A stretch of 63,738 nt of DNA, filler included, from Reticulomyxa filosa (Eukaryota > Protista > Foraminifera), in assembly GCA_000512085.1 (NCBI GenBank). It is 19 parts of 19 records of this genome, joined end to end, with 100 filler letters (N's around TTAATTAATTAA, not from the genome) between each part and the next. Parts side by side here need not be neighbours in the genome. Positions count along the whole stretch, not along the records: positions 31,829 to 38,071 come from ASPP01046468.1; 18 more parts are not named here. One strand, given 5' to 3'. Under the pieces are notes generated by a model. The model was not told where the DNA came from. It worked only from the letters and a program-made list of their open reading frames with translations, and did no database searches. How positions within the stretch are numbered: position 1 is the first letter of the stretch; every line of letters begins with the position of its first letter. Below, in pieces: positions 31,729-38,071 of the stretch. Both the position numbers and the translations under genes were made by a program.

Positions 31729-32715
31729 NNNNNNNNNNNNNNNNNNNNNNNNNNNNNNNNNNNNNNNNNNNNTTAATTAATTAANNNNNNNNNNNNNNNN
31801 NNNNNNNNNNNNNNNNNNNNNNNNNNNNGTTTTGTCAATGTTGTAGCATTGAAAACCATTTTTTTAAGTTGCAAAGAAAAAAAAATTATGTTATTACCCA
31901 AACTTCAGAATTGGATTGATATACTTAATCATTATATAAATCTTTTTTTTTATGAAAAGACTTTTTACAATAACATAATTAATATTCTCGAATTTGCATA
32001 AAATAAAATGCTAAGTTTTTTATTATTCTTCAAAAAAAGGATTGTAATGCGTGAAAACTGAAATCGGTAACGTACGAACTAGAGCAACAGTACACTTAGG
32101 TACTACCTCGTTAAACAATATTTGACAGGTGTTGTGGGGTACCACCTCCTATGAGATGCGCATGTAGTGGCATTTGTTGTTGATATGGGACCTGTTGTAA
32201 GCCCGGGTCCTGGGGGTGTGTTGCTCGTAGGCTTTTTTTTTTAATTAAAAAAAATATTAGTTGGAGAATGTTTTTTCTTTAAAACTCAAAGAAATACTAA
32301 GATCGAATTTGTGATATGTCTATAGATGAAGACAAAGCACGAATTTTTTTTTATCAATTCGTGGATGTGCTTCAATGTGGTAGTTTTGCATCAAACACTT
32401 GCATTTTTAACTACGTTTCAAATTTTGGAGGGAAACGAGAAAAAGAAACTTGTTATTTTTTGTGATAATCTAATGTTGAATAAATAAGAGCGAGTGTTCA
32501 AAATGGGGATGTTATATCGCAAAAGTTTTCTAACGATTTTTTTTTGGGTCATTTTTTACTTTTACAATTTGTTTTCCAGCCTCGAACTAATTCTAAATTT
32601 GAAAAGAGCCTATAATTCGCTTTTCAACACTTTGTTTTAATTTTAAATTGAAAAAAATTTTAGAGATGCTGTTTTTCAATTTTGGTAAAGATAGCATTCC
32701 ATTATTTTCACGTCG

Positions 32716-35700
32716 TTAAAATAAGCTGCAAGGCCGCAAAGACCCCCATGATCTGCCAATTTGAAGATGGGCTTTCAATGGCACACGCAATGGTAAGCAA
32801 TTTTCCATATTGTGCTTTATTAATTTCTATTCATGGATAACAAATTTTAGTTTTAAAAAATTTGAAAAATAAACTACTCTTAAGAAAAAAAAGATGAAGA
32901 TCAAACAAATACATTTTCCAGGCGACATAACTGTGACTTTTAAAAAGTTTTCGGATTTGACTTCGAACAGTAATTCATTGTCAATTTGCAAAACTAATTT
33001 TGCAACGCTGTTTGAATATTGCTGGAATGACGGCGCAGCAAACAAGGAATTGTTTGTGTAACCAAGCATATATGTGGAACAGGACGACTCCAGAACAAGC
33101 AGCTCACAATAGATTTTCACCATTGCACATTTAATAATATCTGTTTCAGATCCCTTAAACAGAGTGCTAATAATTTTTCGGTGAGTATTCTCACAATAAG
33201 TACTTTTTTGTGGAACCGTATTCTTCAAGTATTGCCGTCGGCCCAATAAACTAGCAACAAATCCTCTTCTGCAACATGTTAAAATAATGTCTTCCAAGTA
33301 CTGCATTGATTTAGGAAACTTGAGCTTGAATTTTATGACAATGTCGACAATATCGTCAAAATTTTTTTTCAATTTATTTGCAATGGTATGATAGGTTTGT
33401 CCACGAATAAGCCCGTCCAAAATAAATTCGACATTCTTTTTTTCTTCAGTTGTTACCTTCACAATTTATAATTTGACAATTGCTTTTAAAAATTGCTTCG
33501 TATTTTAATAATTTTAAACACAACAAAATAATTCGTCAAAGTAACTTGTGCACAAGGTTTGTTAAGAATTTGTGAGGAAATATTGGTTATCACGTCCAAA
33601 TCGGATTTCATCACGTGGAGTAAATTTTCATCGTCTGCAAAATAAGCCAACTGTTTTTATTTTGTCGATGCTGCACATATTTCTTTTTTCTCAACACCAA
33701 CATAAACATATTTCTTTGTTTTCCATACCAATCTCAATCCAAGTTGAGAAAAAGTTGCAGATAAAAATACATATCCCAATGGGGCAAGAAAAGTATCTCT
33801 GTACAGGAATAATGCACAAAAAAAATGCTAATTGTATCAAACAGTGAAAACAGAGCATGTAAACAAAAGAGACATACCTTGGAGCAAACGTGACGGCATG
33901 AAAAGGGAACACTCTCTGAGAAGTGTCGACAGGTGGATTTGGAATTAATTGTTGTTCAAATTTTTTAATTTGTTCGAAAGCACGCAATCTCCACACTTTA
34001 TCTGCAGGAAAGATGTAAGACTTACTATCAACTTTGCCAACTACCTCTTGACTTAATGCAGAGTGACTATCTTTTTTGTTGCCGCCTGCCTCGGTTTTCT
34101 CTTCTTCTTTTTTGTTTACACAAGGCCGATCGAAGATTCCAATGCGAACTTCGCATTGGACAATATTTTCGTCGTTGAATTCGAATCCTTTTTCTTTCCA
34201 ATACTTTGCCAGATTAGTTCCTTCAATAAATGGATCATTCACCGTACGATCCTTATCATAGACATGATTCAATTTAATATTAAATTAGAAATAAATGAGC
34301 GATATAACATTGAAGAAACAAAATCAATTAAAGTAATGATAGTTAACCGAGTGAATGGCAACAAGGGTCCCATAGCTATGTGCCCTTCGAACAAAAGCAC
34401 TTGCGACTTTGTCACACATTATGCCATCGTCATTCGTTTCGATTTCGCTTTGTCGCACACAGTGTGCAACAATTATATCCAATTGCAACTCATTTTCGTT
34501 TGTGTGCAGACGACTAGCGAAATCGGCCATATCTCGTCCCATTTTTTTCTCTTCCCAGACGGAATAGCGTTTTACCTTTTTTAAATGTCGTATTCAGGAA
34601 GTAAAAATTGATAACAAAAAAAAAAAAGTCTTGAAGTATTTAGCTACTCAACAGGTTGAAAAGTAAGCTGGCTTTCAACACATTGTAGATTCGGCCAAAC
34701 CAAGCGTAAGCTTCCTGTCTTAGTTCTTGCATGTTCTATTGACGGATGTTGTCGTTCAATATGACAGCTGTCCTCACGATAACAAAAAACACAAACTGTA
34801 ACAAATTATTGAAATTTAAACATTACCAAATAAAAGTTTAACCTTTTATCGAACTTTGCATGGCTGACCAAAGGTTTGACAAAATTAGAAACAAATTGAG
34901 ACAAGCGTTTGTGTTCCTAAATCCCAAATATATATTATATATCAAACAAAACTTTGAATAACAGAAGCAACGTGGACTCGAGAAGATAACAAAAAAAAAA
35001 AAGAAAAAATATAATTACGCCAACATACCACAAGCAAAGGAACGATAGGATGCAATTGAGTAAATAGTTCCAATTCTACTTGTTGGAATTGGCACGCCTT
35101 CATATCACTACAATTCAAATTATCAATGTTATTAGGAAGAGGAAGTTTCAGCACTTGGAAGAGAATACGGTGGCAATCTTGAGGAGAAGATAAATCAAAG
35201 TCTTCTCCTGCCAAAAGACGTGCCTTTTTGATCAAATCCTCAAGTTTTATTTCCATTTCCAGTTGATGTTGTTGAGCAACTTTAGAAGAAAATCCAACTC
35301 CGTGACATTCCATTTCCATTAACACGTGCGACAGGGGCGATTCCATGCACAAAAATGCACTGTTTTATTGGTCATACGTATTTTTATGTAGAGATAAAAA
35401 AACAAGTTTCCCTTCTCAAAGAGCAAACAACAAAAAAAGAGCAATTGTATTTTGTCATAATGTTCGACGTGTACCGTAATGATTGGCGCTTACGAAGAGC
35501 AGATAAGATACGGCCCATGGATAAAAACATTTGCCACGTTTCTAAGCTTTTTTTTCGACAAATTTTACTGACAGAGATTTTACCAGTAGGCAAAATCCGC
35601 AGCTGATCTTCGATGGAAACATCATGGTTTATTTTATCACTTGACATTTGGTTCAGTGAAACATCACGACACCACAGTTTAAAAATGCTGTCGACACTAG

Positions 35701-38035
35701 GCAGCTGAGTTGTATTATACTGTGATGTTAACGTCCAATGCGCAATACGCACATCCCACACTTGTCCTTTGACGCGGATACCAACTTTGTTAAGTAGTGC
35801 CAATTGAAGTTTACAATTGTATCCAATTTTCACTAAAGCGGGATCTTCGAAAGCTGTAGGGAAAGAGGAGTTTTTTTCATCATAAATAAACGAACATTAC
35901 GTCTTCATACTTATGTACAAATGAAAAAAAAGACCTGCAGCAATATCTGCCCAAACCATAGCTTTGTGAATGAAAGAAGGAGTCTCACACGAAGGATGAT
36001 TAATGGGGATGATAAAAATTTTTTGTTCGCACCACGAAACAGCTAACGCACTAACGCTGCTCCGACTTACACGAGGGGGCAACTTTGATTATTCACACAC
36101 AAAACAATAACCAAAAAAAAAAAAATGAACAAGTAACAAAAAGAAAAGAAATTTTTTTTTTAAAAAAGCCAGTCAACTCCTAATTGAAAATCGAATACAT
36201 TTTCCATTTTCATTTCTGTAATATTGGGTTCTGAGGATTGACAGGTAGTCCATATCGAAAATGAGAAAATATTTTGTTCATGCCAAAGCCGAACAAAAGT
36301 TTCATATGTTTCTTGATTTGCAAAAACATTAATGGCAATCGGCAATGTGGGAATATTTTCTCTAGTGTTATGCATTGCAGTTGGTACTTTATGTCTCCAT
36401 AACAGATCTTCCATGTTTTCGTTAAGCCAATTCATAGCACGTATATCCTCAATGCCTGTTGTTCCAACAAATGTGTTATCTTGAGTCTTTTCGCATTTAC
36501 CCATGTCACTCGAATAAGGGCTCATGCTTTTGTCATTTGTCATTGCTATTGTCCGCGATATTGGCGATGGAGATGGGCATGACAGATGTAATTGATGAAC
36601 TAATACATTCAATGTACTATTTGCACAATTTACCTCGACATGGGGTGATAATTGCATTGTTTTTTGGCTTGAATTGACATTTAAATTACTTGTGACAATA
36701 TCAATTTGTTCTATTCTTTTAAATTCGCAGTTCTTTGCATTAATGGAACAGTAGTTTAGTCCACGATGAGAGATGGATTCAACAAACGGATTCGAACGAC
36801 GTCGTTTCTTCTCTGAGTGTAATTGAGAGGCCCCAGTCACAGATGATCCATTTAGTGTTTTTGTATTTTTGTTATTGTCGCTTGCTATTGGCTGTGTTGA
36901 AGGAAAACATATGTCCAACGTCACTTCATCGCTCAGTTTTTGTGAATTTGTATAGTAGTCATTTGTATTGTCCAAACTAATGAGTTCCTCATCTGTTATT
37001 TGTGTAGAAGACATCACCTTCCTTTTTTTAAGTGGTGGCACCAACATATGTTCATCATTTGCAAACATTGCTTTGTCTTTGTTCGTCTCATTATTTTGCA
37101 TGTCTTTGTCCGGCCAATGTCGCTTTCGATTACCACCTTCATTGAACAGATTAGAGCTCTATTGCCATACACACACAAATTTATTTGTGATTCACACATC
37201 ATTCTAGACAAACAAAAGAAATATCTTTTAAGGTATATCTCTATTTCTCACCAGTGTATCAAACGATTGACTTGATACAGGATTTGAATGGTTCATTGTT
37301 TTCATAACATCTGTTGCAACAAAAGATCAACACAAGATAAATGTTATCCGCCACAAAGCACAGAGTTGAAACTTTTATTCGTTGATGAAGGTTGTAGCAG
37401 ATCGTCTGGTGGTTGATGTGTGATAGATACACCATGAGAATGCCATGGCTTTGGTGACAGCAGCTGATTCACATTGGATTGAATCGACTTTGTCAAACGG
37501 TTTAACTCATTCTGTGCTTCCTTGTCTTTGCGAAGAATGGTATCTATTGTTTCCATGTCACTTTGCACAGGCTTGTCATCATAGCTTTCCAAACTCTCAG
37601 TTTTGCAATCGTTGTTCGATGGTTTGAAAGGCAATACGTCTGTTTTCGATAATACGTGGCCACTTGGTGATTGACTTGCGTTTGTACTCGCCGACCCACG
37701 GGACCCCTTGATTGGGGTTCTTCTTGTCACATTAGCACATATTCGATTACCAGTCGATCCATTGGTAAGTGTTGATGGCTTTCTCCAGGTTGTTGAAGGG
37801 ACATCAATATCCAAAGAGTTCATAGATTTTGGGTCCATCATTGACGCAAGATCAAAATCAACCTCACTATAAACCGATGCTATTTGTTGACTTTGAGCTA
37901 ACGCTTTTCTGGAGTTTGCTATCTTTTGTTCTTTCTTTATTTGCTTTTCAAATATTTTTTGCGCTTTCTCTTGGGCCAGTGTCACCAACATTGTTCCCAG
38001 TCTTGGATTCACCTTATGTCGGTCACGTTTTCGTT

Positions 38036-38036
<1 letters not shown>
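32716..38036 (-). CDS. POLQ: DNA polymerase theta-like (family A) protein, C-terminal part (linker, inactive exonuclease-like domain, polymerase fold with substituted catalytic motifs); 5' partial, many exons
   Basis: KIGYNCK...VWDVRIAHWTL; MESPLSHVLMEMECHGVGF; FDLSSPQDCHRILFQVLKLP; HPIV; TKTGSLRLVWPNLQ; RDTFLAPLGYVFLSATFSQLGLRLLAYFADD; GFVASLLGRRQYL; FKGSETDIIKCAMVKI; LVLQIDNELLFEV; last exon MENCLPLRVPLKAHLQIGRSWGSL, stop at 32716-32718. Confidence 0.82.

Positions 38037-38071
<35 letters not shown>

What the first reader, a model, noticed from the sequence alone, without database searches (positions are those of the whole stretch)
32716..33798. POLQ-like family-A polymerase with all three catalytic motifs substituted: a spliced pseudo-polymerase
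Seen in sequence: after splicing (motif-A exon 33729-33798), motif A reads SATFSQLGLR instead of SADYSQIELR, so the catalytic Asp is Thr (codon ACT at 33753-33755) and the Glu is Gly. Motif B reads EKKNVEFILDGLIRG instead of RxxAKxxNFGxxYG (Lys to Glu, Tyr to Arg). IQGSAAD has become FKGSETD. Motif C reads LQIDNELLFEV instead of LQVHDELLFEV (catalytic Asp to Asn, 32977-32979). TGRLSS has become TGSLRL. The frames I traced stay open, splice sites are canonical, and structural residues are conserved to the native C-terminus (VPL...GRSWGSL*). Established: the motif A and C aspartates bind the catalytic metals in family-A polymerases. Inference: the fold is maintained without chemistry, perhaps as a DNA-end-binding or synapsis scaffold fused to a helicase. 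That would imply an unusual end-joining system.
Basis: partly seen in the sequence, partly recalled or inferred. Interest (0 to 1): 0.85.

Follow-up and report, generated by a model that had tools for sequence, protein, structure and literature searches.

The report
Catalytically dead Pol theta paralogue
This is a second, highly diverged copy of the DNA-repair polymerase theta gene in the foraminiferan Reticulomyxa filosa. It has lost essentially every residue needed to make DNA, yet it still looks like a protein-coding gene kept by selection, which would make it a rare non-catalytic family-A polymerase.

Summary
The piece is Reticulomyxa filosa contig ASPP01046468.1. Its minus strand carries a 14-exon POLQ-type gene with 13 GT-AG introns, 1375 open codons, and a 5' end cut off by the contig edge.

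The motif readings are correct:
- Motif A is SATFSQLGLR (Asp to Thr, Glu to Gly).
- Motif 2 is TGSLRL.
- Motif B is KKNVEFILDGLIRG (Lys to Glu, Tyr to Arg).
- Motif 6 is KGSETD.
- Motif C is LQIDNELLFEV (HDE to DNE).

All 96 aligned relatives keep these residues. One of them is an intact full-length POLQ (helicase plus polymerase) in the same genome. That gene is the sister of this copy and shares its intron positions.

The copy is not a decayed pseudogene:
- Synonymous sites between the paralogues are saturated (pS 0.77), but amino-acid identity is 48% (pN 0.31).
- Identity by codon position is 62/73/43%.
- All indels are in frame.
- In simulation, 2-5% neutral divergence would already have introduced stop codons.

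Loss is concentrated on catalytic and substrate-contact residues. Moderately conserved structural positions are kept about as well as in the intact copy.

Three things remain untested. No RNA runs were listed, so expression is unknown. A helicase half, if present, would lie beyond the contig edge. The protein's function is unknown; a non-catalytic partner or regulator of Pol theta end joining is inference only.

The parts
37373..38069 (-). Exon 1 of the piece, in the POLQ central region. It is an internal exon, and the gene's true 5' end lies beyond the contig edge.
   Evidence: The frame is open for 232 codons. ERKRDRHKVNPRLG... is 50% identical to the intact paralogue's internal exon at L001 5592-5735, starting at the contig edge. 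The donor is GT.
37252..37310 (-). Tentative 59-nt exon 2.
   Evidence: It has GT-AG borders and restores the frame between exons 1 and 3. No homology supports it, so it is the least certain exon.
36199..37158 (-). Exon 3, covering the central region and the start of the exonuclease-like region (320 codons).
   Evidence: The frame is open. Patches are 34-35% identical to the intact paralogue (L001 6724-7331). There is no Pfam hit. The downstream donor is somewhat uncertain, because the alternatives scored similarly.
35935..36082 (-). Exon 4, exonuclease-like domain.
   Evidence: 46% identical to the intact paralogue. Intron position is shared.
35475..35853 (-). Exon 5, exonuclease-like (RNase H-like) domain.
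   Evidence: Weak Pfam hits to DNA_polI_exo1 (E 0.0018) and DNA_pol_A_exo1 (E 0.012), both below the curated cut-offs. 50-53% identical to the intact paralogue.
35029..35359 (-). Exon 6, the start of the polymerase domain (N-terminal palm and thumb).
   Evidence: Pfam DNA_pol_A positions 3-78. PDB match to Klenow at E 4e-8 and to Pol theta at E 2e-6. 51-57% identical to the intact paralogue.
34843..34916 (-). Exon 7, thumb.
   Evidence: Colinear with the intact paralogue, 46% identical.
34653..34767 (-). Exon 8, carrying motif 2, which reads TGSLRLVWPNLQCV. The Arg of TGRL is replaced by Ser.
   Evidence: Pfam DNA_pol_A positions 105-133, E 0.11. The intact paralogue reads TGRLFMVWPNLQCV.
34348..34575 (-). 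Exon 9, a lineage-specific insert between motif 2 and motif A.
   Evidence: No Pfam hit. 51-52% identical to the intact paralogue.
33878..34203 (-). Exon 10, the rest of the insert and the approach to motif A.
   Evidence: 36-40% identical to the intact paralogue. The NCBI model uses an acceptor about 48 nt further upstream, so this boundary is uncertain.
33729..33798 (-). Exon 11, carrying motif A, which reads SATFSQLGLR. Relative to Klenow, D705 is Thr (ACT, 33755-33753) and E710 is Gly.
   Evidence: Alignment to Klenow. The intact paralogue reads SADYAQIELR.
33546..33650 (-). Exon 12, fingers.
   Evidence: Pfam DNA_pol_A positions 167-203. 50% identical to the intact paralogue.
32932..33456 (-). 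Exon 13, carrying motif B (O-helix), motif 6 and motif C.
- Motif B reads KKNVEFILDGLIRG.
- Motif 6 reads KGSETD.
- Motif C reads LQIDNELLFEV, with Asn at 32979-32977.
   Evidence: Pfam DNA_pol_A, 58.6 bits. Aligned to human Pol theta. Motif table of 97 sequences. Conserved-column analysis.
32716..32826 (-). Exon 14, the C-terminal palm strand and the stop codon (...VPLKAHLQIGRSWGSLRPCSLF*).
   Evidence: Pfam DNA_pol_A positions 351-380. 71% identical to the intact paralogue in the tblastn match, or 61% over the whole exon. Stop codon at 32718-32716.

Best explanation
The locus is a paralogue of the R. filosa DNA polymerase theta (POLQ) gene. It arose by duplication in the Reticulomyxa lineage and then evolved several times faster than its sister copy.

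Its polymerase domain keeps the family-A fold: thumb, fingers, palm, the exonuclease-like domain and the lineage-specific insert. It has replaced the following functional residues (Klenow numbering, except POLQ K2383):
- both metal-binding carboxylates, D705 (Thr) and D882 (Asn);
- the motif A Glu (Gly);
- the triphosphate-binding O-helix Arg (Lys), Lys (Glu) and Tyr (Arg);
- the primer-terminus and minor-groove contacts, namely the motif 2 Arg (Ser), the motif 6 Asn (Ser) and Gln (Lys), and the motif C His (Asp).

It therefore almost certainly cannot bind dNTP or catalyse nucleotidyl transfer. It also cannot have the dRP-lyase activity that depends on the motif B Lys.

Even so, the reading frame, the splice sites and about half of all residues have been held by purifying selection. 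That makes it a pseudo-polymerase, not a pseudogene.

Shown here: homology, the substitutions, the paralogy, the rate asymmetry and the signs of coding constraint.

Inferred: its function. My preferred reading is that the protein works beside the intact Pol theta as a non-catalytic partner, scaffold or competitor. This could be by co-oligomerising with it or by occupying the same DNA or protein partners, in the way dead polymerase homologues of other families act as assembly hubs (about 40% given that the gene is functional). The main alternative is that its work is done by an N-terminal helicase half that the contig does not show, with the polymerase domain kept as a structural module (about 35%).
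For: Identity and source: exact match to R. filosa contig ASPP01046468.1 and NCBI protein RFI_38967.

Family: Pfam DNA_pol_A across the exons and PDB alignments to Pol theta and Klenow.

Uniqueness of the substitutions: all 96 aligned relatives keep the motif B Arg/Lys/Tyr, the SAAD of motif 6 and the motif C Asp. One relative, P0064, reads PDE instead of HDE, so it lacks the His but keeps the Asp.

Paralogy:
- An intact full-length POLQ lies on contig ASPP01009359.1, with DEAD, POLQ_helical and DNA_pol_A domains.
- It is colinear with this gene from the central region to the stop codon.
- The 10 downstream introns are in shared positions; the exon 3/4 intron is less certain.
- In the tree this copy is sister to that gene (SH-aLRT 93) with Globobulimina outside. 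Branch lengths are 1.42 versus 0.19.
- Tajima counts are 38 versus 13 unique changes.

Coding constraint:
- Over 784 aligned codons, identity is 48%, pN is 0.31 and pS is 0.77, which is saturated.
- Identity by codon position is 62/73/43% and the codon-position base composition matches the intact gene.
- All 6 internal indels are in frame.
- There are 1375 codons and 13 GT-AG introns with no stop.
- Exon GC is 0.39 versus intron GC 0.27.
- In neutral simulation over 794 codons, P(no stop) is 0.04 at 2% divergence and 0.001 at 5%.

Targeted loss:
- In the large exon, 12 of 26 near-invariant columns are changed, against 2 of 26 in the intact copy. Columns conserved at 60-90% are kept 16/28 versus 19/28.
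- 11 of 13 known functional residues are changed against 6 of 25 other near-invariant ones (Fisher p 5e-4). The functional classes come from my knowledge of Klenow, Taq and Pol theta structures.
- Motif C keeps 11 of 13 residues identical to the paralogue and changes only the His-Asp pair.

Fold: in the AF2 model of the NCBI protein, most of residues 230-400 score pLDDT about 80-97. Foldseek aligns about 290 residues to Pol I and Pol theta at E about 1e-14.
Against: - There is no evidence of expression. No sequencing run was listed, so transcription, the splice model and the substitutions are unconfirmed at the RNA level.
- Only one sequence of this copy exists, and no orthologue or second copy was found. 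Selection on the dead lineage after inactivation therefore cannot be measured directly.
- dS is saturated, so no numerical omega can be given. Very recent pseudogenisation (below about 2% neutral divergence) cannot be excluded.
- The tree rests on 191 columns. The branch is long, and the sister grouping has SH-aLRT 93, which is below the 95 mark.
- The DNA-contact residues at the primer terminus are also lost, which weakens a simple DNA-end-holder model.
- The AF2 fold is driven by an alignment of active polymerases, so it is weak independent evidence.
Confidence: 0.7

Rival explanations
1. It is an ordinary unprocessed pseudogene. The duplicated POLQ copy is no longer expressed or functional and is decaying, and the open frames are a leftover.
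For: All catalytic motifs are destroyed. The branch is about 3-7 times longer than that of the sister copy. No expression data exist. The R. filosa assembly is repeat-rich and fragmented, with 30.5% repeats and an N50 of 3.6 kb (PMC13746701). An intact POLQ in the same genome makes this copy dispensable for catalysis.
Against: - 1375 codons in 35% GC DNA contain no stop, all indels are in frame, and 13 of 13 splice-site pairs are intact.
- Simulation gives P(no stop) of 0.04 at only 2% neutral divergence. The copy differs from its sister at 52% of residues while synonymous sites are saturated.
- The codon-position pattern is 62/73/43%.
- Losses are concentrated on functional residues and are not spread evenly.
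- Neutral decay could account for only the last 2% or less of the divergence.
Confidence: 0.15
2. It is primarily a helicase. The gene keeps an active N-terminal Hel308/POLQ-type helicase beyond the contig edge and works like HELQ, while the dead polymerase domain survives only as a structural or oligomerisation appendage.
For: Homology to the intact POLQ starts at the very edge of the contig, at a point that in the intact gene lies just downstream of the helicase exons. The gene is therefore 5'-truncated by the assembly and may well continue into a helicase. The polymerase domain is still constrained.
Against: No helicase sequence is available for this copy and nothing links another contig to it. 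Uniform identity of about 50% across the polymerase-domain exons suggests the domain itself matters.
Confidence: 0.12
3. It is still an enzyme. The rearranged active site (Asp moved to the His position of motif C, Glu retained) would support polymerisation or some other chemistry on DNA ends.
For: Motif C reads D-N-E, so two carboxylates remain next to the old site. The motif 6 Asp and Arg and several palm residues are kept.
Against: The motif A Asp that bridges both metals in every family-A polymerase is Thr, and the motif A Glu is Gly. The triphosphate-binding Lys is Glu, a charge reversal, and the O-helix Tyr is Arg. None of the 96 aligned relatives tolerates these changes.
Confidence: 0.03

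Closest known systems
DNA polymerase theta (POLQ / Mus308 / TEBICHI), specifically the intact R. filosa POLQ on contig ASPP01009359.1 (last gene model ETO24237.1)
   Same: - It has the same domain order from the central region through the exonuclease-like domain to the family-A polymerase domain.
- The downstream intron positions are the same.
- It shares the same lineage-specific insert between motif 2 and motif A.
- Identity is 48% over 784 codons.
- It is the sister in the tree.
   Different: - The motif A Asp and Glu are replaced.
- The motif 2 Arg is replaced.
- The motif B Arg, Lys and Tyr are replaced.
- The motif 6 Asn, Gln and Ala-Ala are replaced.
- The motif C His-Asp pair is replaced.
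- The branch is 3-7 times longer.
- The helicase half is not visible because the contig is cut.
ImuB (catalytically dead Y-family polymerase homologue of the bacterial ImuA-ImuB-DnaE2 mutasome)
   Same: It is a polymerase-fold protein without catalytic carboxylates that is maintained beside active polymerases and serves as a non-catalytic hub (described in PMC12926913). It is a functional analogy only.
   Different: It belongs to a different polymerase family (Y, not A) and is bacterial. ImuB's role is experimentally established, whereas nothing is established here.
Inactivated B-family polymerase modules (the C-terminal half of Pol epsilon, archaeal inactivated PolB)
   Same: They are ancient dead polymerase domains kept as structural scaffolds. 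This rests on my own knowledge and was not tested here.
   Different: They are family B, ancient and widely conserved. The present case is a lineage-specific family-A copy known from a single genome.
DNA polymerase nu (POLN)
   Same: It is a POLQ-derived paralogue of the polymerase half in some animal lineages. PDB chains of Pol nu match the exons.
   Different: POLN is catalytically active and arose independently in animals. This copy groups with the foraminiferan POLQ.

Membership tests
POLQ-type family-A DNA polymerase (by descent) | Family-A polymerase domain (Pfam PF00476) with thumb, fingers and palm in order | tested here: met
   Exon-by-exon Pfam hits cover profile positions 3-380 in order, and the large exon scores 58.6 bits against a cut-off of 34.3. 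PDB matches to Pol theta reach E 3e-12 and to Klenow E 4e-8. Foldseek gives E about 1e-14.
POLQ-type family-A DNA polymerase (by descent) | Groups with POLQ sequences in a phylogeny | tested here: met
   It is sister to the intact R. filosa POLQ (SH-aLRT 93), and together they sit inside a foraminiferan group with Globobulimina (86). The tree uses 191 columns and the branch is long.
POLQ-type family-A DNA polymerase (by descent) | Inactive exonuclease-like domain N-terminal to the polymerase domain | tested here: inconclusive
   The Pfam exonuclease-domain hits fall below the curated cut-offs (E 0.0018 and 0.012). The region is nonetheless 46-53% identical to the same region of the intact POLQ.
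POLQ-type family-A DNA polymerase (by descent) | N-terminal Hel308-like helicase domain in the same polypeptide | not testable with these tools
   The contig ends in a 34-nt homopolymer inside the central region. The intact paralogue has DEAD and POLQ_helical domains upstream of the equivalent point.
Active family-A DNA polymerase (enzyme) | Metal-binding Asp of motif A and Asp of motif C | tested here: not met
   The motif A Asp is Thr and the motif C Asp is Asn. The motif C Asp is 100% conserved, and the motif A Asp 98%, among the relatives.
Active family-A DNA polymerase (enzyme) | O-helix Arg, Lys and Tyr that bind the incoming dNTP | tested here: not met
   Arg is Lys, Lys is Glu and Tyr is Arg. 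Each position is 100% conserved in the 96 aligned relatives.
Pseudoenzyme (non-catalytic homologue retained by selection) | Clear homology to an active enzyme together with loss of catalytic residues | tested here: met
Pseudoenzyme (non-catalytic homologue retained by selection) | Maintained by purifying selection | tested here: met
   - pN is 0.31 against a saturated pS of 0.77.
- The codon-position identity pattern is 62/73/43%.
- Indels are in frame, no exon has a stop, and all splice sites are intact.
- The neutral simulation supports constraint.
- This test is indirect, because no second sequence of the dead lineage exists.
Pseudoenzyme (non-catalytic homologue retained by selection) | Expressed as RNA and protein | not testable with these tools
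   No sequencing run was listed for this stretch, so read laying could not be used.

The most novel reading that the evidence does not exclude
This may be the first family-A pseudo-polymerase: a dead Pol theta paralogue, kept by selection, that co-assembles with or competes against the active Pol theta to bridge DNA ends or to restrain mutagenic theta-mediated end joining in a giant multinucleate foraminiferan. It would be a eukaryotic family-A counterpart of ImuB or of the dead half of Pol epsilon.
Probability: 0.25. Interest if true: 0.7.

Novelty: new variant of a known kind. Interest (0 to 1): 0.5.

Why it matters
Dead polymerase homologues that act as scaffolds are known in the B and Y families. 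The papers I could search describe no catalytically dead family-A or Pol theta homologue.

A naturally evolved Pol theta that keeps its fold but has lost dNTP binding, metal binding and primer-terminus contacts would be a natural separation-of-function allele. It would show which non-catalytic roles of the polymerase domain (oligomerisation, end synapsis, partner binding) are worth keeping on their own. The active sister gene in the same genome offers a clean paralogue pair for such tests.

The significance is limited. The copy is known from one draft genome of one protist, and there is no expression or functional evidence.

Tried and rejected
- **RNA evidence.** The look-up of sequencing runs listed no run, so read laying was not used and splicing and expression remain unconfirmed.
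- **Word-indexed protein searches.** Searches with the large exon and with the NCBI model found no closer copy. They also missed the 43%-identical paralogue, so their blanks mean little. The third search was not spent on a helicase hunt. Exon-sized queries restrict candidate length, a hit could not be linked to this contig, and a blank would be uninformative.
- **Numerical dN/dS.** This was rejected because pS exceeds the Jukes-Cantor limit. I used pN against pS, codon-position identity and a stop-codon simulation instead.
- **Short exons against PDB.** The motif 2 exon gave only a chance hit.
- **Other features in the piece.** Rfam and tRNA scans found nothing. The repeat scans showed only A/T-rich intron tracts and the terminal homopolymer.
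- **Misalignment.** The alignment of the NCBI model to relatives misaligns its first ~190 residues (insert region). Only columns from motif A onward were used.
- **Spliced model.** It was searched exon by exon by reference. The joined protein was never built for, or sent to, any search or fold tool. The fold used the public NCBI model P0001, which retains some intron-derived residues and lacks the true C-terminus.
- **Complex prediction.** It was not run, because I do not claim a specific binding pair.
Full report
**What the piece is**

The 6243-base piece (window 31829-38071) is identical to the reverse complement of Reticulomyxa filosa contig ASPP01046468.1 from assembly GCA_000512085.1. It is 35% GC. 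On its minus strand lies one multi-exon gene. NCBI annotated this gene as three separate models of 557, 268 and 484 residues. The last model is 'hypothetical protein RFI_38967' (P0001). Nothing else was found in the piece: no Rfam family, no tRNA, and only A/T-rich intron tracts and a terminal 34-nt T homopolymer.

**Checking the observation**

I translated the open segments and searched them exon by exon, by reference.

- Pfam DNA_pol_A matches successive exons in profile order, from positions 3-78 through 351-380 of 381. The large exon scores 58.6 bits.
- phmmer against PDB aligns the large exon to human Pol theta at E 3e-12. POLQ DDRQQAKQICYGIIYG aligns to EEKKNVEFILDGLIRG, QGSAADI to KGSETDI, and LQLHDELLYEV to LQIDNELLFEV.
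- The 70-nt exon 33798-33729 aligns to Klenow ...VIVSADYSQIELRI as ...VFLSATFSQLGLRL.

In Klenow numbering the changes are:

| Motif | Changes |
|---|---|
| Motif 2 | R668S |
| Motif A | D705T, E710G |
| Motif B | R754K, K758E, F762-equivalent Y to D, Y766R |
| Motif 6 | N845S, Q849K |
| Motif C | H881D, D882N |

E883 and R841 are kept. The mapping to Klenow numbers is from my knowledge of the family.

I extracted the same region from 96 relatives found by an exhaustive phmmer search. Every one keeps the motif B Arg, Lys and Tyr, the SAAD of motif 6 and the motif C Asp. One relative, P0064, reads PDE in place of HDE.

**Gene model**

I used the intact paralogue (below) as a guide. For each junction I enumerated frame-consistent GT/GC-AG pairs in both genes and scored the resulting peptides against each other. 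The two upstream introns were read by hand. The result is:

- 14 exons and 13 GT-AG introns of 62-144 nt;
- 1375 codons plus a stop codon;
- no internal stop and no stop in a split codon.

The intron sizes fit the 87-nt mean reported for this genome (PMC13746701). The 10 downstream introns sit at the same positions in the paralogue. The exon 3/4 junction was also guided by the paralogue but is less certain, because three options scored almost equally.

Uncertain points:
- Exon 2 (59 nt) has no homology support.
- The donor of exon 3 is uncertain.
- The acceptor of exon 10 differs from NCBI's choice, which lies about 48 nt upstream.

NCBI's RFI_38967 retains intron-derived residues after motif A and reads through the last intron, so it lacks the true C-terminus.

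**An intact paralogue in the same genome**

The best non-self hit is P0002, which is 43% identical. It is R. filosa 'DNA polymerase theta isoform 1' (ETO24237.1) on contig ASPP01009359.1. That contig carries a complete POLQ split into four gene models with DEAD, POLQ_helical and two DNA_pol_A domains.

Translated comparison shows that the two genes are colinear from the intact gene's central region (L001 5592) to the stop codon. Identity is 35-71% per block. The intact copy reads:
- motif A, SADYAQIELR;
- motif 2, TGRLFM;
- motif B, RQRAKSVLYGMLYG;
- motif 6, QSSAAD;
- motif C, LQIHDELLFEV.

It also means that R. filosa does not lack normal Pol theta chemistry.

Homology begins at the very edge of our contig (window 38036). 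The gene is therefore cut at its 5' end by the assembly. Whether it has a helicase cannot be seen.

**Phylogeny and rate**

I built a tree of 46 sequences over 191 columns. The dead copy is sister to the intact R. filosa POLQ (SH-aLRT 93). Globobulimina turgida comes next (86). The terminal branches are 1.42 and 0.19 substitutions per site.

A Tajima count with Globobulimina as outgroup gives 38 changes unique to the dead copy and 13 unique to the intact one (chi-square 12.3). The duplication therefore appears to be specific to the Reticulomyxa lineage and was followed by strongly asymmetric evolution. The caveats are the short alignment and the long branch.

**Pseudogene or maintained gene?**

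- Over 784 aligned codons the paralogues are 48% identical. pN is 0.31. pS is 0.77, which is at or beyond saturation, so no numerical omega can be given.
- Identity by codon position is 62%, 73% and 43%, against a random expectation of about 27%. The codon-position base composition matches that of the intact gene.
- Almost all of the amino-acid divergence lies on the dead copy's branch. If that branch had been neutral while synonymous sites saturated, protein identity would have fallen towards random. It has not.
- All six internal indels are in frame. All 13 splice-site pairs are intact. Exons are 39% GC and introns 27%.
- I simulated neutral substitution on the 794 complete polymerase-half codons using the intron base composition. 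P(no stop) is 0.21 at 1% divergence, 0.04 at 2% and 0.001 at 5%. This ignores indels and the further 580 upstream codons, so it is conservative.

Neutral decay can therefore account for at most the last 2% or so of the history. It cannot account for the loss of more than a dozen near-invariant residues.

**Pattern of loss**

In the large exon, 12 of the 26 columns that are at least 90% conserved among relatives are changed. In the intact paralogue only 2 of 26 are changed. Columns conserved at 60-90% are kept 16/28 times against 19/28 in the intact copy.

I classed near-invariant positions from motif 2 onward by their known role. Of the functional residues, 11 of 13 are changed. Of the others, 6 of 25 are changed (Fisher p 5e-4, classes from my own knowledge).

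Motif C is the clearest case. Of its 13 residues, 11 are identical to the paralogue, and only the His-Asp pair differs. This is the signature of an active site that was specifically given up while the fold was kept.

An AlphaFold2 model of the public NCBI protein gives pLDDT of about 80-97 over most of residues 230-400, in the fingers and palm. Foldseek aligns about 290 residues to Pol I and Pol theta structures at E about 1e-14. This is weak independent evidence, because the input alignment consists of active polymerases.

**Mechanism**

Shown: the protein cannot have the canonical two-metal site, because the bridging motif A Asp is Thr. The triphosphate-binding Lys is reversed in charge.

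Inferred from established family-A enzymology: there is no dNTP binding and no polymerase or terminal-transferase activity. There is also none of the lyase activity that depends on the motif B Lys.

The primer-terminus and minor-groove contacts are also replaced: the motif 2 Arg, the motif 6 Asn and Gln, and the motif C His.

My best guess, given that the gene is functional, is:
- about 40% that it is a non-catalytic partner, scaffold or competitor of the intact Pol theta, by analogy with ImuB and the dead half of Pol epsilon;
- about 35% that its activity lies in an unseen helicase half, with the polymerase domain kept as a structural module.

**Comparison with what is known**

By descent it is a POLQ family member. 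As an enzyme it fails the defining catalytic features.

A recent survey of bacterial polymerases lists catalytically inactive Y-family homologues and inactive exonuclease or PHP domains. The passages I read mention no dead family-A polymerase domain (PMC12926913). My literature searches found no description of a dead POLQ paralogue.

The protein itself is in public databases as an uncharacterised hypothetical protein.

**Limits**

- There are no RNA data.
- There is no second sequence of this lineage.
- dS is saturated.
- The contig is truncated.
- The joined spliced protein was deliberately not built for, or submitted to, any search or fold tool.

**Verdict**

The locus is most likely a selected, catalytically dead Pol theta paralogue (about 0.7). 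It is a new variant of a known kind and of moderate interest.

Noticed in passing
window 32716-38036 (L002 36-5245): NCBI splits this single gene into three models of 557, 268 and 484 residues. RFI_38967 keeps about 19 intron-derived residues after the motif A exon and a few more before motif B. It also reads through the last intron, so it ends in intron translation and not in ...GRSWGSLRPCSLF.
   Followed up: partly
L001 1359-11122 (R. filosa contig ASPP01009359.1): The intact R. filosa POLQ is likewise split into four gene models (626, 868, 637 and 292 residues). Its motif 2 reads TGRLFM, where TGRLSS is usual. A DUF3605 gene lies upstream.
   Followed up: partly
window 33878-34575 and L001 9228-9863: Both paralogues carry a long insert of about 180 residues between motif 2 and motif A, with no Pfam match. 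Its first half is 51-52% identical between the copies, so it is constrained and may be a foraminiferan-specific version of a Pol theta insertion loop.
   Followed up: no
window 34611-34627, 34779-34795, 34986-35002, 36107-36123: Four introns contain the same T-run motif on the gene strand (TTTTTTTTTTTTGTTAT or close variants). In two of them it lies 10-40 nt upstream of the acceptor. It may be a polypyrimidine or branch-site signal typical of this genome.
   Followed up: no
window 38038-38071: The contig ends in a 34-nt T homopolymer (poly-A on the gene strand) directly upstream of the first homologous exon. This is probably the reason for the assembly break.
   Followed up: no
window 32129-32230: A patch about 100 nt long lies roughly 500 nt downstream of the stop codon and looks more GC-rich than the AT-rich DNA around it. 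Its minus-strand frame is open and Pro/Gly/Thr-rich (45 aa). It has no match and no identified function.
   Followed up: no
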